Shown here one piece after another: positions 6,601 to 16,250 of a stretch of 64,000 nucleotides of DNA; the stretch's first letter is position 1, and each line of letters begins with the position of its first letter. This DNA is from Obrimoposthia wandeli (taxonomy: Eukaryota). The stretch lies in NCBI GenBank assembly GCA_977020255.1, contig CDROCS010000506.1, positions 1,860,001 through 1,924,000 on the forward strand. Reading direction: 5' to 3'. Position numbers and translations under genes: made by a program. The notes beneath the pieces were generated by a model. The model searched no databases. It was given only the letters and a program-made list of their open reading frames with translations, and was not told the origin of the DNA.

Positions 6601-7974
6601 CTAGCTCCTGTGCTGTTCACGAACCAGGTTCAAAGCCTGGTCTATTTCAAAATCTTTAGTCGCTTTTAAATAAGCAACCTGCTCTTCTAATACTACTACA
6701 GCTTCATTAATACCGGAAAGCGATATTAGCTTTTCGGCGATTAATTCAGCGTCTCTTTGGTTAGCAATGCTCACAGCGATAGTATGTGCCTTCACTTGAC
6801 CGACATTTTCTAACCCCAAAGAAATAATAAACCACACTATCATTACCGCAGCAATAATAAAGAATAAACCTTGCGAACCTAATTGCGAGTACAAACTACC
6901 GGCAATAATACCGCCACAAAATGCACCTGCAAACTGTGAAGTTGAATAAATGCCCATTGCCGACCCCTTTGCGCCAGCCGGAGCCGACATAGAGATCATC
7001 GCAGGTAACGAGGCTTCTAAAAAGTTAAAGGCGGTAAAATACAACACAATCGCTAAGCCAAATAGCCATAGGTTACCATGAGCAAAACCCATAACGCACA
7101 GGGCAGTACCCATTAACGCGATCGCGAATAAGAAAAATTGTTTATTCATTTTCTTTTTCGCCGCAATAATCAACATAGGTACCATCAATATAAATGATAG
7201 CAGCAATGCAGGGAAATATATCCACCAGTGGTGCTCACCAACCAGTCCCGCAGCCTCTAACTCAAACGGTAATGATACAAATACCGCAGTCAGGGTTAAG
7301 TGTAATAAAAAGATACCTGCATCGAGACGCAATAATTGCGGATCACGTAACATGGCTCTTAATTTGTTCTTATTGGTACTCGCATCACCCGCAGGCGCTT
7401 TGGTTGTTGAGTTAGGTACAATATAGTACACCACTAACATACCAACGATAGCCAAAGCAGCTGTCACAAAGAAGATGCCTTTAAGACCTACCCATTGTGC
7501 TAATACAGGGCCAGCCACCAGCGAAAACGCAAATGAAAGTCCGATACACATGCCAATGACAGCCATCACTTTAGGGCGTTGTTGCTCACGCGTAATATCG
7601 GCAGCTAATGCCAGAATAGCACTGGCAACAGCACCAGTACCTTGCAACATACGTCCAAAAGCCACGCCGTAAACGGAATCAGCCATGCCAGCAACAATGC
7701 TACCGACGCAAAATAAGCCTAAGCCAGCAATAATGACGGGCTTACGGCCAATACGATCAGACAATTGTCCCATCGGTATTTGCAGCATTGCTTGGGTTAA
7801 ACCATAAGCACCAATCACGATACCAACCCACAGTGGTGAATAACCGATTAAATCACGTCCATAAATGGCAAAAACGGGCATGATCATAAATAACCCCAGC
7901 ATTCTTAAGCCAAATACTAACGCTAGCGACACTGCTGTTTTTTGCTCTAATTTAGATAAAGCTACATTATCCAT
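6601..7974 (-). CDS. MFS transporter, YajR family
   Basis: 12 hydrophobic segments, [14 protein letters not shown] start, [10 protein letters not shown] motif A, small C-terminal YAM-like domain. Confidence 0.9.
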
Positions 7975-8062
7975 AATTAATCCATCAACCCCTTAATATT
8001 TACAGCGCCATGTTAACACGTCATGCTAGCTGACAATAAAAATTTATTTAAAACAATCACTG

Positions 8063-8071
8063 CCCCCCCCC
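8063..8071. repeat. C9 homopolymer in an AT-rich divergent intergenic region
   Basis: tgCCCCCCCCCga read directly. Confidence 0.9.
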
Positions 8072-8282
8072 GACCATGCTTTAGCATTAACAAAAAACAA
8101 AAATAACCGCAAAACACTAAGTTAATAATACTAATGTGAAACAAAACGCCATAAAATTACATAATAACAATTAAAATCAAGTGTTTGTGCAAGATCTAAC
8201 TATAAATATAGCTGAAAGATAAAAGTATGAGTCGTGATAAAACTAAATGCCAACTTGACTCATATATAACACCTCGATATGT

Positions 8283-8297
8283 TAACAACTAATTAAC
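8283..8297 (-). promoter_or_regulatory. Putative ArcA box upstream of the LuxR regulator
   Basis: Minus strand GTTAATTAGTTGTTA, 13/15 match to the ArcA consensus GTTAATTAAATGTTA; part of a TTAACAACT direct repeat with 11-bp period. Confidence 0.55.
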
Positions 8298-8490
8298 AAC
8301 TCGTTGGCGTGTCTTTCTCCAGAAAGGCTAGCTTACGACTATCACTGTTCGTTAATGCTTTAGTGCTAAGTTGTGTTGAACTTAGGTATTACATTTAACA
8401 CTTTAATTAAGTCATTAGCTCAGTTTAATTGTTTATAATGCTATTAAGCATAAATATGGATATCACCACACACACTAAAGGATTAGTTAT

Positions 8491-9129
8491 ATGTCGGATT
8501 ACCCAAATGTAGTACTGCTGTCACAGCCAAGTCTACAAGTCGCCACGTTAGTCTCTTGCTTAAGAGCCAAACTCGATATACCGGTACAACAGCTGCGTGA
8601 AGTCGCAGAAATTGAACGAATTTCAATAGACGACAACTTACTCTTACTGGTTGATACTGATAACCTCAGCAGTACTTCACAAGAACAACTTAAAAACAAA
8701 TTAAAGCAATATCATGGCATGTTTCGTTTGGCATTGATTAATTTAAGTGATGATACCACGATGGAAAACATTTCCACTTGGCCATCAATATTCGGCGTAT
8801 TTAATAAACGTGATGAACTCGATGTGGTGTGCAAAGGCATACAAAAGATCACAGAAGGTGAGTTCTGGATGCCAAGGCGCACGCTTAGTTCTTTGATCTC
8901 TATTTATCGTTCAACTAAAACCGTTGATCTCGATAGAAAACCAGAACTAACAACACGTGAACAAGAAATTTTACGTCAGCTAATGACAGGTTCATCCAAT
9001 CTAGAAATTGCCGATACGCTGTATGTCAGCGAGCACACGATTAAATCGCATCTCTATAATGTTTTCAAAAAAATAAAAGTGAAGAATCGCCTACAAGCGG
9101 TATCTTGGGCGAAAGAAAATCTGATATAA
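8491..9129 (+). CDS. LuxR-family transcriptional regulator, VpsT/CsgD/QstR-like (degenerate receiver plus HTH)
   Basis: Receiver-like N-terminus lacks the first acidic pair; WMPR motif at residues 126-129; LuxR HTH LTTREQEIL...G.SN.EIA..L.VSEHTIKSHLYNVFKKI.VKNR.QA. Confidence 0.9.
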   Translation: MSDYPNVVLLSQPSLQVATLVSCLRAKLDIPVQQLREVAEIERISIDDNLLLLVDTDNLSSTSQEQLKNKLKQYHGMFRLALINLSDDTTMENISTWPSIFGVFNKRDELDVVCKGIQKITEGEFWMPRRTLSSLISIYRSTKTVDLDRKPELTTREQEILRQLMTGSSNLEIADTLYVSEHTIKSHLYNVFKKIKVKNRLQAVSWAKENLI

Positions 9130-9380
9130 AATGAATGGCTCAAGGTTATTACCCCCGCTAAAATAACGATCCCTTTTAGAGTAAAAATAACTGTACCTCT
9201 TAGACTAAGATATATAAAAGATCATATTTTATATGGTCCTTTATACTTCCAATGAGATAATTACATACTTATCAGTACTTATAATGTTTCTTTTTTGTTA
9301 AAACAATGGTACTTGTTAATGCTAAATACTGAGAACGCATGGATACGTGACCCTATCGCTCGCAATTCAAAGGATCTGAA

Positions 9381-11546
9381 GTGGAGCAAAATAACGAGAC
9401 GCATAGCGGACTCCAACAAGGAGCCCAAGATGAAATAGATTTAACGCATTTAGTTAATATTATTAGCCGTGCGTTTTTACGTATCTGCGTGATCACGACG
9501 CTTATTGCTATCATTGCGGCCATATTCATTGCCGATTTACCTCCGATTTATAAAGCCAGTACCGTACTGCAATTACAAATACAGCAAGCGAAGCCAATTG
9601 CGATCCAAGGCGTATTACAAAACGACATAAACAATAAAGATTACTTTCAAACGCAAATAGAGATTTTACGTTCTGATTTAATCACCGAAAAAGTCATTAA
9701 CAAATTACAGCTATCTCAACACCTCTATTACACACAGAACAAGCCTCTCACTAAATTCGCCGAGATCATCAACAACATAAAAAAAACACTATCAAAGGAT
9801 ACTGCGCCAGTACCAGTAATTAACCCACATGCTTTTATTGCTCAGATAAAATCTGCAGTCCAGGTCAGTTTAATTAAAAACACCCCATTACTCACCATCA
9901 GTTATGAACACTACTCTCCTGAGTTAGCGGCCTTAATTGCTAATACCTATGCAGATGTATATATCCAACATAATCGTGATTTTAGAGTCCAGCAAACAAT
10001 AACAGCCTCGCTTTGGCTTAAAGAAGGCGTGCAAGCACTCAAAGATAACCTCAATTTAGCGGAAAGTAATCTCACTGCTTTTCTGCAGCAAGAAAACTTA
10101 ATTAATGACAGCGGTATTAATAATTTCACCACCACAGAATTACAGATCCTCACCACAAAATTAAATGTAATCCGTAGTGAGTTAATTAGCGCGCAAACCT
10201 TATATCGACAAATAAATCAGGCTGAAAATTTAGACCTACTCACATCAACATCAATCAAAGCTCTTTCCAATCAAACTGTTATCGTTGAGTTGAGAAATAA
10301 TTATACTCGAGTGAAAAATAATATAGCCGAATTATCAAAACGCTACGGCCCACTTCATGACAAAATGATCCACGCAACTGCACAACTCAGTGTCATCGAA
10401 GATAATGCTAAAAAAGAGCTACAACAACTCTCTCTCGGTTTTAAAAAAAGCATCACCCTGCTTGAACAAAATGAATCTGCAGTCATCGCCGCATTACAAA
10501 CAAAAAAAACCGAGCATCGCACCCTGATTAAACAGAAAGCACGTTATAAAGAGCTCAATCGAGAACTCACCTCAAGTAACGAATTATATAATATGTTCTT
10601 GATGCGATTAAAAGAGACCAATCTAACCAATGATCTTAATCTATCAACGGTCACCATTACCGACAGAGCCAAAATACCGCGATCTCCTTTCAAACCGAAA
10701 CGTGCATTGATATTAGTACTGGTGATCTTGCTGACACTGATGCTGTTAGTGGCACATGCGTTACTCAGTGCATTATTCTTTGTCAATCAAGACAATGTGA
10801 AAAACCTAGCAGTGCCATTATTAGGTACACTACCTAATTTTAAAGCCATTAATAAAAAATTTGAGCAACACTCCCCACAAAAGTTATTCCAGACCAACAA
10901 TGTGATTTTTGAAGCCACACAAAGTTTACGTACATCACTGCAACTATCAGGAGTAACCAAGAAACAGCAAGTCATCATGGTTACGTCCAGTACTGTCGCT
11001 GAAGGAAAAAGCACATCTGCAATTTATCTCGCGATGGCATTAGCTCAATCCCATAAAGTCATTATTTTAGAAGCGGATATGCGAAAGCCATCGGTAAGAA
11101 AAAAAATGGGGATCCCGAACATGCAACGGGGACTTGTCGATATTCTGACTAAAAGTGGTAATTTAAACAGTTATATCTGGCATGATCAGCATTCAAACCT
11201 CGCGGTACTATCAGCGGGCGAACTTACAGATAGCCCGTCTAACTTACTTATTTCCAAACGTTTCTCAAGCTGCCTTGCGATTTTAAGGTCACAGTATGAT
11301 TATATTATTATCGATTCTCCACCAAGCTTGCTTGTTAGTGATGCGCTTATTATTGGTCAACACTCTGATTTTAATATTTTAGTTACCCGTTCAAACAAAT
11401 CTAAAATGAGCGAGCTCAACGGCACTATCGAATTACTGGCAAAACATGGCGTCAGTACCAATGGCATTATCTTAAACCAAGAACCTTTAAAGAATGATAA
11501 GCGCTATCAATACTATTATAAAAGGGAGGCTGCGCTGGCTTCATAG
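9381..11546 (+). CDS. Polysaccharide co-polymerase / bacterial tyrosine kinase (Wzc/GumC/VpsO-like)
   Basis: DEIDL + TM1, periplasmic coiled coils, A..P..P.KP before TM2, Walker A (SSTVAEGKST), A' (EADMRKP), B (IIIDSPP), C-terminal Tyr cluster RYQYYY; GTG start. Confidence 0.92.
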   Translation: MEQNNETHSGLQQGAQDEIDLTHLVNIISRAFLRICVITTLIAIIAAIFIADLPPIYKASTVLQLQIQQAKPIAIQGVLQNDINNKDYFQTQIEILRSDLITEKVINKLQLSQHLYYTQNKPLTKFAEIINNIKKTLSKDTAPVPVINPHAFIAQIKSAVQVSLIKNTPLLTISYEHYSPELAALIANTYADVYIQHNRDFRVQQTITASLWLKEGVQALKDNLNLAESNLTAFLQQENLINDSGINNFTTTELQILTTKLNVIRSELISAQTLYRQINQAENLDLLTSTSIKALSNQTVIVELRNNYTRVKNNIAELSKRYGPLHDKMIHATAQLSVIEDNAKKELQQLSLGFKKSITLLEQNESAVIAALQTKKTEHRTLIKQKARYKELNRELTSSNELYNMFLMRLKETNLTNDLNLSTVTITDRAKIPRSPFKPKRALILVLVILLTLMLLVAHALLSALFFVNQDNVKNLAVPLLGTLPNFKAINKKFEQHSPQKLFQTNNVIFEATQSLRTSLQLSGVTKKQQVIMVTSSTVAEGKSTSAIYLAMALAQSHKVIILEADMRKPSVRKKMGIPNMQRGLVDILTKSGNLNSYIWHDQHSNLAVLSAGELTDSPSNLLISKRFSSCLAILRSQYDYIIIDSPPSLLVSDALIIGQHSDFNILVTRSNKSKMSELNGTIELLAKHGVSTNGIILNQEPLKNDKRYQYYYKREAALAS

Positions 11547-11548
11547 CC

Positions 11549-12748
11549 GTGCTTAACCTTATGCTTATATTACGTTGCCTGCTATTTATCCTCTGCTCTG
11601 CGCCATTTTATCTACTGGCAGACTCTTCATCTGCTTACGACTCTGATTTAGGGATTGAAATTACACCGAGCCTAGCGATCAATTACAAACACGACGACAA
11701 CATAGCCAATGTCAGTAGTAACAAAACAGCCTCTAATTTAATTGAAATAATGCCTGCATTACGCATTGAAGGACAAAAATACAATAACCAATTAACACTC
11801 AATTACGCAGCCAAAAAAAATCTATATAGCGAAAGTGAAAGCAGTAATTTCACTGACCATAAATTACAAGCTGGTATCAGCCGCGCCATGAATAAACGGC
11901 ATACGTTGGCATTGTTATATCAGTTTGACCAAGGCCACGATGCTCCCAACACAGGGGTCTCAGAAGGTGACATTCGAATCGCTGAATCTGCTGTTTTTTA
12001 TACTCAAGCTATCGATCTTAACTATCGCTACGGCAGTCAATCCGCCACTGTAACGCTAGCGCCCAGAGTCAGCTTTAATAACAAGCGCTACGATGAGGAC
12101 AATAGTAATTACACAACGGCTGCAGATTTCAATGAATACGATTACGGCCTTGCCATTTATTATCGCCTTGCCGCCAGTGTTAACTTGTTAGTCGACATGA
12201 GTCATATCACCACAAATTATCAAGACACTGGCAATGCTAAAGACAGCACTCAAGGCAGCGATAATTACCTCGTTTATAGCGGCATAAACTGGGATATCAC
12301 AGGAAAAACACAAGGCGTAATAAAACTGGGTTATGAAAAAATAAATTTCGCCGATAATAGCCGTACAGCGCAAGCGGATCCAAGCTGGGATGTTGGTATT
12401 CGCTGGTCACCAAAAACCTATTCCACCATCAATATCAGCGCCAGTCAAAAAATACGCAATGCAGTCACAGGTACTGACAGTATTGAAACCAATCATCAAT
12501 CCATCAACTGGCAACACAGCTGGCGTTATAATTTATCCAGTTCATTGGCTTACATTCACCTTGATGAGGTATACCAGCAGAGCGAACGTAGTGACAATAG
12601 TCACCAGCTTACTATGGCATTGGATTATCAATTTCGCCGCTGGTTAACATTCGGATTAAGTTATGACTACCAAAATAAATCATCGTCAGATTCACGACTC
12701 GCTTATGATAAAAGCATCTACGGTCTAACCAGTAATTTGGTCTTCTAG
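11549..12748 (+). CDS. Outer-membrane beta-barrel for polysaccharide export (VpsM/EpsX-like)
   Basis: Signal peptide, Y.HDDNI motif, amphipathic beta strands, W.PKTYS and Y.FRRWL motifs, terminal Phe; between the PCP and OPX genes. Confidence 0.75.
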   Translation: MLNLMLILRCLLFILCSAPFYLLADSSSAYDSDLGIEITPSLAINYKHDDNIANVSSNKTASNLIEIMPALRIEGQKYNNQLTLNYAAKKNLYSESESSNFTDHKLQAGISRAMNKRHTLALLYQFDQGHDAPNTGVSEGDIRIAESAVFYTQAIDLNYRYGSQSATVTLAPRVSFNNKRYDEDNSNYTTAADFNEYDYGLAIYYRLAASVNLLVDMSHITTNYQDTGNAKDSTQGSDNYLVYSGINWDITGKTQGVIKLGYEKINFADNSRTAQADPSWDVGIRWSPKTYSTINISASQKIRNAVTGTDSIETNHQSINWQHSWRYNLSSSLAYIHLDEVYQQSERSDNSHQLTMALDYQFRRWLTFGLSYDYQNKSSSDSRLAYDKSIYGLTSNLVF

Positions 12749-12772
12749 ATGATTAATATGAAAGGACACACC

Positions 12773-13327
12773 ATGTTTAATCCCACTCTGTGGCGACTCT
12801 GTTTATCACGATCTTGTTTATTACTATCCTGTTTATTACTATCAACATCAGCGATTGCGCACCAGAAGCATCACAACTACACAGTTGGCGCCGGCGATAA
12901 AATCGCGATTGATGTCTATGGTGAAACAGACCTGAGTTTTAACGTTATGATTGATTCTTCTGGCAGTATTGATTATCCCTACCTTGGTGAAATCGCCATT
13001 GTAGGTTTAACACCGGGCGAAATAAAACAAAAAATATATAGCGGTTTAAAAGGATCTTATCTCATCTCACCTAAAGTAATGGTCAGTATCGCCACATTCC
13101 GTCAATTTTATATTAAAGGCGAAGTAAAGCGCCCTGGAGGATATCCTTTTCGTCCCGGCTTAACCGTTGATAAAGCCATTGCACTTGCAGGAGGGTTCAC
13201 TGAACGCGCAGCAAAACAGTCCATAATGCGTTCGACGAATAGCGATCTCAGCAAAACACAAAGCGTCAACATAGATGATCATATCTCTCCCGACGATATT
13301 CTTAATATTGCCGAGAGTTTCTTCTAA
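12773..13327 (+). CDS. Short periplasmic OPX polysaccharide export protein (VpsN/EpsY-like)
   Basis: Poly_export motif Y..G.GD.I.I.VYGE.DLS...G.I.YPYLG, one SLBB domain (GEVKRPGGY...TV..AIALAGGF), ends ESFF with no C-terminal outer-membrane helix. Start moved to ATG 12773 (AAGGA SD). Confidence 0.9.
   Translation: MFNPTLWRLCLSRSCLLLSCLLLSTSAIAHQKHHNYTVGAGDKIAIDVYGETDLSFNVMIDSSGSIDYPYLGEIAIVGLTPGEIKQKIYSGLKGSYLISPKVMVSIATFRQFYIKGEVKRPGGYPFRPGLTVDKAIALAGGFTERAAKQSIMRSTNSDLSKTQSVNIDDHISPDDILNIAESFF
12799..12843 (+). repeat. Three imperfect 15-bp tandem repeats in the OPX signal peptide
   Basis: ctgtttatcacgatc / ttgtttattactatc / ctgtttattactatc. Confidence 0.8.
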
Positions 13328-13391
13328 AGTAATGCCTAACAAGTTCGAGTATGCGATACTGACTGATTATTTTATGTAGTGTGAGTTATGT

Positions 13392-16250
13392 ATGGATCAA
13401 ATCATTGTTCGGGGCGCACGCACCCATAACCTTAAAGATATCAATGTTGAACTACCGCGCGATAAGCTAATTGTTATCACAGGGTTATCTGGTTCTGGCA
13501 AGTCGTCATTAGCATTTGATACGCTTTATGCAGAAGGTCAGCGTCGTTATGTGGAATCACTTTCGGCCTATGCTAGACAATTCCTGTCCTTGATGGAAAA
13601 ACCCGATGTCGATCATATCGAGGGGCTCTCTCCGGCGATCTCTATCGAGCAAAAATCAACATCGCATAACCCACGCTCTACAGTTGGTACAATCACCGAA
13701 ATCTATGATTACCTGCGTCTGTTATTCGCGCGTGTCGGCGAACCACGTTGCCCGACTCATAATGCCCCTTTAGCAGCACAGACGATCACGCAAATGGTTG
13801 ATCACGTGTTGGCATTAGAAACCGGCCGTAAATTAATGTTATTAGCGCCGATCGTGAAAGAACGTAAAGGCGAACATGTTAAAACGCTCGCTAGCTTAGC
13901 CAGTCAAGGTTATATCCGCGCACGTATCGACGGTGAAGTGTGTGATCTTTCCGATCCACCGGCATTAGACCTACATAAAAAACATACCATTGAAGTCGTT
14001 ATCGATCGCTTTAAAGTTCGAGATGACCTGCAACTGCGCCTGTCGGAATCCTTTGAAACCGCACTAAACATGTCTGGCGGTACGGCTTATATTACCGATA
14101 TGGATGATAACGATGCAGCACCTATCGTATTTTCGGCTAACTTCGCCTGCCCTCAATGTGGTTATAGCATGGCAGAACTTGAACCTAGAGTGTTCTCGTT
14201 TAACAATCCAGCTGGTGCTTGCCATACGTGTGATGGCCTAGGCGTACAGCAATATTTTGATCACGACCGCATTATTATCAATGCCGACTTGAGTCTATCT
14301 GGTGGCGCGATCCGTGGTTGGGATAAACGTAATTTTTATTACTTCCAAATGCTGACTTCATTAGCTAAGCATTATAAGTTTGATCTCACCAAGCCGTTTA
14401 ATTCATTAACCAGCGAAGTACAAGATTACATTCTGCAAGGCAGTGGCGAGCAAGAAATTGAATTTAACTACGTCAATGATCGCGGCGATATTGTTGTCCG
14501 TCGCCACGCGTTCGAAGGCATAATTCCGAATATGCAGCGCCGCTATAAAGAAACGGAATCGAATGCAGTACGTGAAGAACTAGGTAAATACTTAACCACT
14601 AAATCCTGCGAGACCTGTTCCGGTTCACGTTTGCGCCAAGAAGCACGCCACGTATATATCCAAGAAACCACATTGCCGGAAGTATCACGCATGGCCATAG
14701 GTGAAGCATTTGATTTCTTTGCCGGTATGGAACTGCCTGGTCAAAAAGGTCAAATCGCAGAAAAGATCCTCAAAGAAATTGGCGATCGTCTGGGATTCTT
14801 AGTTAATGTCGGGCTTAATTATTTAAGTCTAGAACGCAGCGCAGATACCTTATCTGGTGGTGAAGCACAAAGGATCCGTCTGGCGAGTCAAATCGGTGCA
14901 GGTTTGGTTGGCGTGATGTATGTACTCGACGAACCGTCGATCGGTTTACATCAACGTGATAACGAACGCTTGCTACAAACATTGATCCATTTACGCGATC
15001 TTGGTAATACCGTGATTGTTGTAGAGCACGATGAAGATGCGATCCGCGCAGCTGATTACGTACTGGATATTGGCCCGGGTGCTGGTGTGCATGGTGGTGA
15101 GATCGTCGCACGCGGTAATGTCGATGATATCTTAAAATGTGAAAACTCACTGACAGCTGATTACCTCAGTGGCCGTAAAGCCATAGAGATCCCAGCGCAA
15201 CGCACACCGTTAACCGATAAATGGGTTCATCTTAAAGGTGCCACAGGTAACAACCTTAAAAATGTTGATCTTTCGGTACCCGTTGGCGTGATGACTTGTG
15301 TTACGGGTGTATCAGGTTCAGGTAAATCAACCTTGATCAATGATACTTTCTTTAAGATCGCCCATATTGAATTAAATGGCGCAACTGTAACGACACCTGC
15401 GCCTTATGCTTCAATAGAAGGACTGGATCAACTGGATAAAGTCGTCGATATTGATCAAAGCCCTATTGGTCGTACACCACGTTCGAATCCAGCTACTTAT
15501 ACCGGGATCTTCACTGCTATTCGTGAAATTTTTGCCGGTACGCAAGAATCCCGCTCGCGTGGTTATAAACCTGGTCGCTTTAGCTTTAACGTTAAAGGCG
15601 GTCGTTGTGAAGCCTGCCAAGGTGATGGTTTAATCAAAGTAGAAATGCATTTCTTACCGGATGTTTATGTACCTTGCGATAGCTGTAAGAGCCAACGCTA
15701 TAACCGTGAAACATTAGAAGTACGTTACAAAGGTAAAAATATTCACGAAGTATTGGATATGACAGTTGAAGAGGCTAATACCTTCTTTGCACCGATCCCG
15801 CCTATTGCCCGTAAATTACAAACCTTAATGGATGTTGGTCTGTCTTATATACGCTTAGGTCAATCAGCAACAACCTTGTCTGGTGGTGAAGCACAACGCG
15901 TGAAACTGGCTAAAGAGTTATCCAAACGCGATACCGGCCAAACTCTGTATATCTTGGATGAACCTACTACAGGTTTACATTTCCATGATATTAAATTATT
16001 AATGAAAGTATTACACCGCCTACGCGACCATGGTAATACAATCGTTATTATTGAGCATAACCTTGATGTAGTGAAAACTGCCGATTGGGTTATCGATTTG
16101 GGTCCAGAAGGCGGTAGTGGTGGCGGTGAAATTCTTGTCGCTGGTACACCTGAAACGGTTTCAGAACACCCAGATAGCCATACTGCACGTTTCTTAAAAC
16201 CTATGTTAGCACGTGCAAGACAATTACAACTGAATAACCAAGAGTCATAG
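13392..16250 (+). CDS. uvrA: Excinuclease ABC subunit A
   Basis: GARTHNLK...[15 protein letters not shown], two ABC ATPase modules, zinc fingers, 952 aa. Confidence 0.99.

What the first reader, a model, noticed from the sequence alone, without database searches (positions are those of the whole stretch)
9381..13327. Stand-alone composite OPX/beta-barrel polysaccharide export cassette with no synthesis genes
Seen: three tightly packed genes (2-bp gap, then near-abutting) encode a PCP/tyrosine kinase, a roughly 400-aa beta-barrel, and a 184-aa OPX with one SLBB domain, no lipobox and no outer-membrane helix. No glycosyltransferase, Wzx, Wzy, phosphatase or sugar-nucleotide gene is adjacent, and I see no mobile-element scars. 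Knowledge: short OPX plus a separate beta-barrel plus a PCP defines the recently described composite translocon (Myxococcus EpsY/EpsX, V. cholerae VpsN/VpsM/VpsO), usually inside large EPS clusters. Inference: an orphan export machine with its own VpsT-like regulator that serves a polymer made at another locus. It may share an undecaprenyl-linked glycan pool with the nearby PglL. That would be an undescribed EPS/glycosylation system in this lineage.
Basis: partly seen in the sequence, partly recalled or inferred. Interest (0 to 1): 0.72.

Follow-up and report, generated by a model that had tools for sequence, protein, structure and literature searches.

The report
Export-only polysaccharide secretion module in Moritella
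Three adjacent genes in a Moritella chromosome encode a complete, intact polysaccharide export channel with no sugar-assembly genes beside it; it is a new example of a known machine, kept by selection in most Moritella species and deleted independently in three.

Summary
Window 9381-13327 encodes three genes.
- PCP-2a tyrosine autokinase, 721 aa.
- 18-stranded, AlgE-like BBP2_2 barrel.
- 184-192 aa D1D2 (Class-3) OPX. It has no Wza_C helix and no conserved lipobox. Its invariant C-terminal Ser-Phe-Phe matches the porin-binding tail shown for Myxococcus WzaB.

No synthesis gene lies within about 10 kb.

- The flanking order ssb-MFS-LuxR-uvrA-pglL is a conserved backbone. It also occurs in Motilimonas and in three Moritella species that lack the cassette.
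- The regulator carries a WMPR motif, the QstR/BrpT-type proline variant. It is 96-98% identical in the cassette-less genomes. Neither it nor PglL is cassette-specific.
- The cassette is ancestral in Moritella. The three "empty" sites keep the last 12-40 nt of the OPX gene, with three different left junctions, in three different clades. These are independent deletions.
- Where present, the genes are intact in 9 of 10 species, with dN/dS of 0.08-0.17. Contigs from a marine metatranscriptome cover them.

The same chromosome has a canonical wza-wzb-wzc capsule locus. Reference Moritella genomes also carry a cps-like locus with its own barrel, OPX and PCP, and a split syp-like locus. The cassette is therefore a fourth export set, and its substrate is unknown.

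Verdict: a new member of a known kind, in an unusual export-only context. E. coli gfc is an export-only precedent.

The parts
8491..9129 (+). LuxR/VpsT/CsgD-family regulator with a WMPR motif (QstR/BrpT-type proline variant). It is a backbone gene, not part of the cassette.
   Evidence: GerE plus VpsT-like_REC domains. CsgD model scores 187 bits, below its 250-bit cut-off. Best PDB match is VpsT 3kln, E 3.9e-31, with WMPR aligned to WLTR. The gene is 96-98% identical in cassette-less G006, G010 and G013.
9216..9244 (+). Hairpin followed by a T-run after the regulator gene. It is a likely terminator that separates the regulator from the cassette.
   Evidence: Read from the sequence. In other Moritella it is a clearer stem plus T7 run, and it is conserved in the alignment. 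The consensus scanner did not call it.
9283..9380 (+). Conserved block of about 100 nt upstream of the PCP start: putative promoter and 5' leader, with AAGGA 8 nt before the GTG.
   Evidence: About 90% identical in five Moritella species whose uvrA dS reaches about 1. No Rfam match at E<=1.
9381..11546 (+). PCP-2a polysaccharide co-polymerase with a bacterial tyrosine (BY) autokinase domain.
   Evidence: Wzz, GNVR and AAA_31 domains. TIGR01007 scores 136 bits, above its 108-bit cut-off. TM helices at about 32-50 and 443-461. Walker A/A'/B and the Tyr cluster are conserved. dN/dS 0.08.
11549..12748 (+). Outer-membrane 18-stranded beta-barrel porin (BBP2_2; CpsB/EpsX/WzpB-like). The likely start is the ATG at 11561.
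   Evidence: PF10082 E 1.3e-21. AF2 model with pLDDT 85 and 18 strands. Top structural match is AlgE, Z 20.6. C-terminal residue is Phe. dN/dS 0.17.
12749..13327 (+). Class-3 (D1D2) OPX protein with a type I signal peptide and a C-terminal Ser-Phe-Phe. The likely start is at 12773.
   Evidence: Poly_export plus one SLBB, no Wza_C. AF2 pLDDT 83.8. Best folds are short Wza 7xff and Class-3 WzaB 9n9a. FF is invariant in 18 homologues. dN/dS 0.11.
13289..13327 (+). 3' end of the OPX gene. This stretch survives as a remnant at the deleted sites of three other Moritella species.
   Evidence: G013 keeps 39 nt that encode PDGILNIEQSFF plus the stop. G010 keeps a decayed copy. G006 keeps AGTTTCTTCTAA.

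Best explanation
The three genes form a functional, export-only, trans-envelope polysaccharide secretion module of the Class-3 OPX type.

Proposed mechanism:
- The inner-membrane PCP-2a/BY-kinase oligomer receives a Wzy-polymerised, undecaprenyl-diphosphate-linked polymer.
- The periplasmic D1D2 OPX ring docks through its C-terminal Ser-Phe-Phe tail on the periplasmic rim of the 18-stranded AlgE-like porin.
- The porin provides the outer-membrane exit.

The module has its own conserved promoter/leader. It was already in place between the QstR-like regulator gene and uvrA in the Moritella ancestor. Selection maintains it in most species. It is dispensable enough to have been deleted at least three times.

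It carries no initiating transferase, flippase, polymerase, glycosyltransferase or phosphatase. It must therefore work in trans with genes elsewhere on the chromosome, as the E. coli group 4 capsule (gfc-etp-etk) operon does with the O-antigen locus.

Shown here: gene content, folds, motifs, conservation, selection, deletion scars, and presence in an RNA library.

Inferred: assembly of the complex, use in trans, and the identity of the polymer.
For: - Domains and motifs.
- 18-strand barrel with AlgE as the top structural match, Z 20.6, rmsd 4.8 over 317 residues.
- The OPX folds as D1D2. Its best matches are the short Wza entries (7xff/7xfd) and M. xanthus Class-3 WzaB 9n9a.
- The C-terminal FF is invariant in 18 homologues. 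SFF is found in all Moritella orthologues and in the Motilimonas homologues. It equals the WzaB S202-F203-F204 tail, which is required for WzpB binding and for secretion (PMC12819527).
- The order PCP-barrel-OPX-uvrA is intact in 9 of 10 Moritella species that hold the orthologue.
- Median dN/dS is 0.08 (PCP), 0.17 (barrel) and 0.11 (OPX), against 0.02 for uvrA.
- The ~100-nt upstream block is conserved.
- Contigs of metatranscriptome X10, all at least 95% identical (five of ten at 99% or more), cover the PCP, barrel and OPX but not the regulator gene.
- Cassette-less genomes carry remnants of the OPX 3' end, with three different left junctions, and sit in three clades of a uvrA tree.
- No synthesis genes lie within about 10 kb.
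- An export-only operon is a known arrangement in E. coli G4C (PMC8592465).
Against: - No partner synthesis locus was identified. In M. marina and M. dasanensis, all three PHPT-containing loci already have an OPX and a PCP, either adjacent or as part of a split syp-like set.
- The OPX is not a lipoprotein, whereas lipidation is required for WzaB oligomerisation. The WzaB Arg106-Arg107 PCP contact aligns to Ile-Ser here.
- The PCP periplasmic domain (about 392 aa) is only about 16 aa longer than that of the canonical Wzc on the same chromosome. The composite model expects a longer reach.
- There is no adjacent Wzb.
- Three independent losses show that the module is not essential.
- The RNA evidence consists of contigs from an RNA library. 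DNA carry-over is not excluded, and the strain is a near relative, not this one.
Confidence: 0.75

Rival explanations
1. The cassette is controlled by 'its own' adjacent VpsT-like, c-di-GMP-responsive regulator. It is functionally tied to the neighbouring PglL through a shared undecaprenyl-linked glycan, forming an undescribed EPS/glycosylation system.
For: The regulator lies 252 bp upstream on the same strand, and a GGDEF-EAL gene is nearby. Relatives of this regulator family (VpsT, BrpT, CsgD) control matrix genes. Any Wzy-dependent pathway and PglL draw on Und-PP-linked units (general knowledge).
Against: The order ssb-MFS-LuxR-uvrA-pglL exists without the cassette in three Moritella species and two Motilimonas species. 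The regulator is 96-98% identical there, so it has other targets. A terminator-like hairpin separates it from the cassette. Its motif is WMPR, the proline variant that makes QstR and BrpT c-di-GMP-independent (PMC6237807).
Confidence: 0.12
2. The cassette is a functionless relic. It is the export end of a once-larger EPS locus whose synthesis genes were lost, and it is now drifting toward deletion.
For: It has no synthesis genes. It was lost three times independently. In G011 the PCP is split over several reading frames and the cassette is not next to uvrA. Other export sets exist.
Against: dN/dS is 0.08-0.17 across species whose synonymous sites are near saturation. All ORFs are intact in 9 of 10 species. 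Catalytic motifs, the Tyr cluster, the SFF tail and the barrel C-terminal Phe are all conserved. The leader is conserved. The genes are covered in an RNA library.
Confidence: 0.08
3. The cassette is a recently acquired genomic islet, inserted between the regulator gene and uvrA in some Moritella species.
For: Presence is patchy (10 of 13 species). Cassette proteins are much more divergent than the flanks (barrel 46-95% against uvrA 94-99%). Its closest outside relatives are in Motilimonas rather than the Moritella paralogues.
Against: The empty sites are not naive. They retain the OPX 3' end. The cassette is at the same site in both deep Moritella clades. There are no repeats, integrase or tRNA at the borders. 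G+C is 0.36-0.42, against about 0.40 for the surroundings. A gain in the Moritella ancestor remains likely.
Confidence: 0.04

Closest known systems
Myxococcus xanthus WzcB-WzaB-WzpB (also EpsV/EpsY/EpsX): Class-3 OPX / porin / PCP translocon
   Same: - Short D1D2 OPX without an outer-membrane helix.
- Adjacent 18-stranded AlgE-like barrel.
- PCP-2a with a BY-kinase.
- C-terminal Ser-Phe-Phe on the OPX.
- WzaB (9n9a) is the best sequence match in the PDB, E 4.9e-16.
   Different: - The OPX here has a type I signal peptide and no lipidation site.
- The WzaB R106-R107 contact is Ile-Ser here.
- Gene order is PCP-barrel-OPX.
- No Wzx, Wzy or GT genes are in the locus.
Vibrio cholerae VpsM/VpsN/VpsO, and the cpsA-D/brp-type modules (PHPT-barrel-OPX-PCP) seen here in Motilimonas and as a Moritella paralogue
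   Same: The same three protein families. Motilimonas proteins are the nearest non-Moritella relatives: barrel 30%, OPX 52%, PCP 32%. One Moritella orthologue is annotated 'CpsB' by its source.
   Different: - Those modules start with an undecaprenyl-phosphate glucose phosphotransferase gene.
- They place the PCP last.
- The window cassette has no PHPT, and its barrel orthologue group was found only in Moritella.
- Vps and Cps sequences themselves were not compared here. That similarity rests on the literature (PMC9601211) and on annotation names.
Escherichia coli group 4 capsule operon gfcABCDE-etp-etk
   Same: It is an export-only operon: OPX, BY-kinase PCP and an outer-membrane barrel, with no synthesis genes. 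It exports a polymer whose repeat unit is made at another locus (PMC8592465).
   Different: GfcE is a Class-1 OPX with a Wza_C helix. GfcD is a different kind of barrel. The operon includes the phosphatase Etp and GfcA-C. It is an analogy of organisation, not homology of the whole operon.
Pseudomonas aeruginosa AlgE (alginate porin)
   Same: It is the best structural match of the barrel: Z 20.6, 317 residues aligned, 18 strands.
   Different: Sequence identity is 10%. AlgE belongs to a synthase-dependent pathway and has no OPX partner. OprD/Occ porins score within about 1-1.5 Z units of it.
Vibrio cholerae QstR / V. vulnificus BrpT (for the neighbouring regulator)
   Same: A VpsT-like fold, and the proline variant of the c-di-GMP motif (WMPR against WLPR) (PMC6237807). 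From memory, qstR (VC0396) lies between ssb and uvrA in V. cholerae.
   Different: The QstR sequence was not compared directly. The nearest syntenic non-Moritella homologue tested, in Motilimonas, is only 37% identical. The regulon is unknown.

Membership tests
Composite Class-3 (D1D2) OPX / beta-barrel translocon | The OPX has only Poly_export plus SLBB domains, with no Wza_C or GfcC, and is <=280 aa | tested here: met
   Pfam. AF2 model and fold matches to 7xff, 9n9a and Wza D1-D2. Length 184-192 aa.
Composite Class-3 (D1D2) OPX / beta-barrel translocon | An adjacent gene encodes an 18-stranded outer-membrane barrel that resembles AlgE | tested here: met
   18 strands, pLDDT 85. AlgE is the top match at Z 20.6. 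The barrel gene abuts the OPX gene.
Composite Class-3 (D1D2) OPX / beta-barrel translocon | C-terminal Phe-Phe tail of the OPX that binds the porin (WzaB F203-F204) | tested here: met
   FF is invariant in 18 homologues; the window OPX ends in SFF. Binding itself was not tested.
Composite Class-3 (D1D2) OPX / beta-barrel translocon | N-terminal lipidation of the OPX (required for WzaB; about half of Class-3 OPX proteins) | tested here: not met
   Type I AxA cleavage sites, with no conserved Cys. About 30% of Class-3 OPX proteins are Sec/SPI (PMC9603273), so this feature does not define the class.
Composite Class-3 (D1D2) OPX / beta-barrel translocon | Twin-arginine loop of the OPX that contacts the PCP (WzaB R106-R107) | tested here: not met
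   It aligns to Ile-Ser in the window OPX. The interface is probably specific to each system.
Composite Class-3 (D1D2) OPX / beta-barrel translocon | Embedded in, or next to, Wzx/Wzy/GT genes of the same pathway | tested here: not met
   None within about 10 kb on either side. The same holds in nine other Moritella species on the uvrA side.
Composite Class-3 (D1D2) OPX / beta-barrel translocon | Physical OPX-porin-PCP complex that is required for secretion | not testable with these tools
   Needs pull-down or MST assays and mutants.
PCP-2a / BY-kinase (Wzc, Etk) | Two TM helices flanking a Wzz/GNVR periplasmic domain; cytoplasmic Walker A, A' and B; C-terminal Tyr cluster | tested here: met
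   TIGR01007 scores above its cut-off. The Wzc equivalog models score far below theirs (169 against 1068 bits), so this is not an orthologue of E. coli Wzc.
PCP-2a / BY-kinase (Wzc, Etk) | Cognate LMW-PTP (Wzb/Etp) encoded beside it | tested here: not met
   No CxGNxCRS signature anywhere in the 64-kb window. A Wzb is present in the distant capsule locus at C506:1386074-1386505.
XrtA/XrtB PEP-CTERM EPS export set (EpsL, EpsE, EpsF/G) | Scores above the NCBIfam equivalog cut-offs | tested here: not met
   EpsL 36.7 against 275 bits; EpsE 97.9 against 263; pepcterm_export 73.7 against 180; EpsF 135 against 423.
VpsT-type c-di-GMP-dependent regulator (for the neighbouring gene) | W[F/L/M][T/S]R c-di-GMP-binding motif | tested here: not met
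   WMPR aligns to the VpsT WLTR motif. The proline variant is the QstR/BrpT type (PMC6237807).

The most novel reading that the evidence does not exclude
The cassette is a Class-3 counterpart of the E. coli group 4 capsule operon. It would be a genus-wide, export-only 'second exit' that takes Und-PP-linked repeat units made by another locus (O-antigen/capsule, cps-like or the split syp-like genes) and secretes them as a distinct high-molecular-weight polymer. It would do this under its own conserved leader, possibly under the QstR-like regulator. Its repeated loss would then mark lineages that gave up that surface layer.
Probability: 0.2. Interest if true: 0.55.

Novelty: new member of a known kind. 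Interest (0 to 1): 0.35.

Why it matters
Composite OPX/porin translocons were described only in 2022, and their mechanism was dissected in 2026. Almost all the data come from Myxococcus.

This cassette offers three things:
- A compact three-gene version, detached from synthesis genes, conserved across a psychrophilic and piezophilic marine genus that includes a fish pathogen.
- The experimentally defined SFF porin-docking tail, but without the lipid anchor or the Arg-Arg PCP contact. It therefore tests which of those features are general.
- Natural deletion variants for comparison.

It also shows that adjacency to a regulator and to PglL can simply reflect a conserved backbone. The wider point is modest: export and synthesis genes for surface glycans can be uncoupled. 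That is already known from E. coli G4C and from the split Myxococcus clusters.

Tried and rejected
- Rfam scan of 7900-13500 at E<=1 found nothing, so there is no JUMPStart/ops element or riboswitch.
- Consensus promoter and terminator scans gave no more hits than shuffled sequence.
- PEP-CTERM/exosortase membership was rejected on scores.
- Insertion-island model: rejected, because the empty sites hold OPX remnants.
- The small OPX-less synthesis cluster beside mfd/csiV looked like the missing partner. It contains a GT2, an acetyltransferase, a 412-aa gene, a kinase-less PCP, a GT4 and a 621-aa PHPT. But it is present in all 13 Moritellaceae, including the cassette-less ones. It is better explained as the distal half of a split syp-like locus, whose sypA-E-like half, with a 728-aa OPX, lies next to sucABCD.
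- Co-occurrence of the cassette with the number of paralogous barrels showed no pattern.
- Foldseek E-value ranking of the barrel gave only generic barrels. Re-ranking by structure put AlgE first.
A second kinase-less PCP paralogue at C506:1113906 and the stop codons reported in G006/G010 were therefore not examined.
- The large representative-protein search was not run, because no claim here rests on absence beyond.


Full report
**What is there.**
The window is part of a 3.78-Mb bacterial contig (C506) inside a 1.35-Gb mixed assembly. The organism is a Moritella. The barrel protein is 95% identical to that of M. dasanensis ArB 0140.

Three co-directional ORFs lie at 9381-11546, 11549-12748 and 12749-13327.
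- **PCP.** It has Wzz, GNVR and AAA_31 domains. It passes the BY-autokinase domain model TIGR01007 (136 bits, cut-off 108). It has two TM helices at about 32-50 and 443-461. Walker A (SSTVAEGKS), A' (ILEADMR) and B (IIIDSPP) motifs and a C-terminal RYQYYYK tyrosine cluster are conserved in ten orthologues.
- **Barrel.** The middle protein matches BBP2_2 (E 1.3e-21). It ends in Phe. It folds with pLDDT 85 into 18 strands with long outward loops and short periplasmic turns. Ranked by structure, AlgE is the best solved match (Z 20.6, rmsd 4.8, 317 residues). OprD-type 18-strand porins score about 1-1.5 Z lower.
- **OPX.** The last protein has Poly_export plus one SLBB and no Wza_C. It folds as a D1D2 protein (pLDDT 83.8). 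Its best matches are short Wza proteins (7xff/7xfd), the Class-3 OPX WzaB of M. xanthus (9n9a), and domains D1-D2 of E. coli Wza.

**Details that bear on mechanism.**
- The OPX ends in Ser-Phe-Phe. Phe-Phe is invariant in all 18 homologues aligned. SFF is found in every Moritella orthologue and in the Motilimonas homologues.
- In M. xanthus WzaB, the C-terminal S202-F203-F204 tail is what binds the porin WzpB, and it is required for secretion (PMC12819527).
- Two other WzaB determinants are absent here.
  - The signal peptides of the orthologues end in AxA and share no cysteine. The cysteines in the window protein sit in a lineage-specific insertion in the hydrophobic core. The protein is therefore not a lipoprotein.
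  - The Arg106-Arg107 loop that contacts WzcB aligns to Ile-Ser.
- About 30% of Class-3 OPX proteins have type I signal peptides (PMC9603273). This is a variant within the class, not a departure from it.
- The PCP periplasmic domain is about 392 aa. That is only about 16 aa longer than in the canonical Wzc of the same chromosome, and shorter than in the cps-like paralogue.

**Surroundings.**
- Upstream lie ssb, an MFS transporter and a 212-aa LuxR-type regulator.
- Downstream lie uvrA and a PglL/Wzy_C-family gene.
- No glycosyltransferase, flippase, initiating transferase, sugar-nucleotide gene or LMW-PTP occurs from 1 to about 25 kb of the window.
- The rest of the window was listed as ORFs only and not scanned against families.

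**The backbone is independent of the cassette.**
- The order ssb-MFS-LuxR-uvrA-pglL occurs without the three genes in three Moritella species (G006, G010, G013). There the regulator is 96-98% identical, and the regulator-uvrA spacer is 115-215 bp.
- The same order occurs in two Motilimonas genomes, with the regulator 37% identical.
- The regulator aligns best to VpsT (3kln, E 3.9e-31). At the c-di-GMP motif it has WMPR where VpsT has WLTR.
- The proline variant is what makes V. cholerae QstR and V. vulnificus BrpT independent of c-di-GMP (PMC6237807).
- A hairpin plus T-run follows the regulator gene.
- Neither the regulator nor PglL can be called the cassette's own. A regulatory link is still possible, but adjacency is not evidence for it.

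**History.**
- A barrel orthologue (46-95% identity) is present in 10 of 13 Moritellaceae species representatives.
- Nothing above 32% identity was found in 288 other genomes of the order.
- The word search of 5.8 billion proteins returned only Moritella-like sequences above 30%.
- In nine species the order PCP-barrel-OPX-uvrA is intact.
- The three empty sites are deletion scars.
  - G013 keeps 39 nt that still encode PDGILNIEQSFF plus the stop.
  - G010 keeps a decayed copy of the same stretch.
  - G006 keeps AGTTTCTTCTAA.
  - In each case the remnant is fused at a different left junction downstream of the regulator gene.
- On a tree of the first 852 nt of uvrA, the three genomes fall in three different clades, each next to cassette-bearing species.
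- The cassette was therefore present at this site in the Moritella ancestor and was lost at least three times. The single-gene tree is weak on its own. The three distinct junctions carry the argument.

**Is it alive?**
- Median pairwise dN/dS is 0.08 (PCP C-terminal half), 0.17 (barrel) and 0.11 (OPX), against 0.02 for uvrA.
- Barrel divergence is highest in the predicted external loops: mean pairwise identity 0.56, against 0.67 in strands and 0.72 in periplasmic turns.
- About 100 nt upstream of the GTG start, including an AAGGA ribosome-binding site, are about 90% conserved among five species. No Rfam family matches this block.
- In a marine metatranscriptome (X10), contigs all at least 95% identical (five of ten at 99% or more) cover the PCP, barrel and OPX. 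The neighbouring regulator gene has none, and uvrA is on a separate contig. This is compatible with transcription. It is not proof, because the data are contigs, DNA carry-over is possible, and the strain is a relative.

**Other export sets.**
- Contig C506 has a canonical wza (402 aa, with Wza_C), wzb (143 aa, CVGNICRS) and wzc (728 aa) locus. It includes nonulosonic-acid-type and glycosyltransferase genes and lies at 1357-1388 kb.
- Reference Moritella genomes also have a cps/brp-like module, PHPT-barrel-OPX(175 aa)-PCP. It is 25%, 44% and 28% identical to the window barrel, OPX and PCP.
- They also have a syp-like system split into two loci.
  - One half holds a STAS protein, a 377-aa protein, a 728-aa OPX, a ParA-like protein and a response-regulator phosphatase, next to sucABCD.
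  - The other half holds a GT2, an acetyltransferase, a 412-aa protein, a kinase-less PCP, a GT4 and a 621-aa PHPT, next to mfd/csiV.
- All PF02397 initiating transferases found in M. marina and M. dasanensis belong to these loci.
- The window cassette is thus a fourth export set, and I found no synthesis locus left without an exporter.
- The nearest outside relatives of the cassette are the Motilimonas PHPT-barrel-OPX-PCP modules (30%, 52% and 32% identity), not the Moritella paralogue. The cassette differs from both in having the PCP first and no PHPT.

**Reading.**
The best-supported explanation is a functional, export-only Class-3 OPX/porin/PCP module that works in trans. [quoted passage not shown] Schwabe et al. 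already counted 287 short-OPX/barrel couples whose nearest polysaccharide gene is only a PCP (PMC9601211). Which polymer the Moritella module exports cannot be decided from sequence.

**Verdict.**
This is a new member of a known kind, in an unusual and evolutionarily informative context. Interest is moderate to low.

Noticed in passing
G001 (M. dasanensis) C15:31361-35030 = L065:9159-15030; G004 (M. marina) C1:1357783-1365810 = L060:12784-20000 with L061:1-810: Moritella carries a syp-like polysaccharide system split into two distant loci. A sypA-E-like export/regulatory half (STAS protein, 377-aa protein, 728-aa multi-SLBB OPX, ParA-like protein, RR-SpoIIE phosphatase) sits beside sucABCD. 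A sypL-R-like synthesis half (GT2, acetyltransferase, 412-aa protein, kinase-less PCP, GT4, 621-aa PHPT) sits beside mfd/csiV.
   Followed up: partly
window 9283-9380: The ~100-nt block upstream of the PCP start is about 90% identical in five Moritella species. That is more conserved than synonymous sites of the neighbouring genes. No Rfam match was found. It may hold the promoter and a regulator-binding site.
   Followed up: partly
window 13376-13392: In two metatranscriptomes the uvrA contigs begin at 13376 and 13382 (one preceded by adapter sequence), 10-16 nt before the uvrA ATG. This may mark the uvrA transcript start. All three deletion derivatives keep the OPX 3' end and the 64-bp spacer, perhaps because the uvrA promoter lies there.
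   Followed up: no
L032 (G011:C5:21847-26022): In the most divergent Moritellaceae genome (2.7 Mb), the barrel and OPX are intact. The PCP matches are spread over at least three reading frames, and no uvrA follows the OPX. This could be a relocated, decaying copy or a poor MAG assembly.
   Followed up: no
G006:C1:436086-437552 and G010:C182:11826-13289: The search reported one in-frame TAA in the SypO-like kinase-less PCP gene of two of the three cassette-less genomes, and none in the ten cassette-bearing ones. This could hint at co-loss or be an artefact. The sequence could not be fetched.
   Followed up: no
window 12773-12870: The OPX signal peptide of the window strain, M. dasanensis and G007 carries a lineage-specific insertion rich in Leu/Ser/Cys (LCLSRSCLLLSC). 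It mimics a lipobox (LLSC) but is absent from the other orthologues.
   Followed up: yes
window 10365-11546 against L043 (M. marina): Synonymous divergence of the PCP C-terminal half between the window strain and M. marina is saturated. For uvrA next door, dS is 0.44. Against the more distant G002/G003, the PCP dS is only 0.93. This suggests allelic replacement or recombination inside the cassette.
   Followed up: no
G000:C506:1357000-1388000: A canonical wza-wzb-wzc capsule locus lies on the same contig. It includes PseB/DegT/cytidylyltransferase-type (nonulosonic acid) genes and glycosyltransferases.
   Followed up: partly
G000 contigs C1101:299-301 kb and 364 kb; C1350:20 kb and 52-54 kb; C5543; C253: The 1.35-Gb assembly holds at least two Moritella-like genomes, plus other bacteria that each carry barrel plus short-OPX plus PCP modules in the cps order. 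The window's 'genome' is therefore a mixture. Only contig C506 was treated as the organism.
   Followed up: partly
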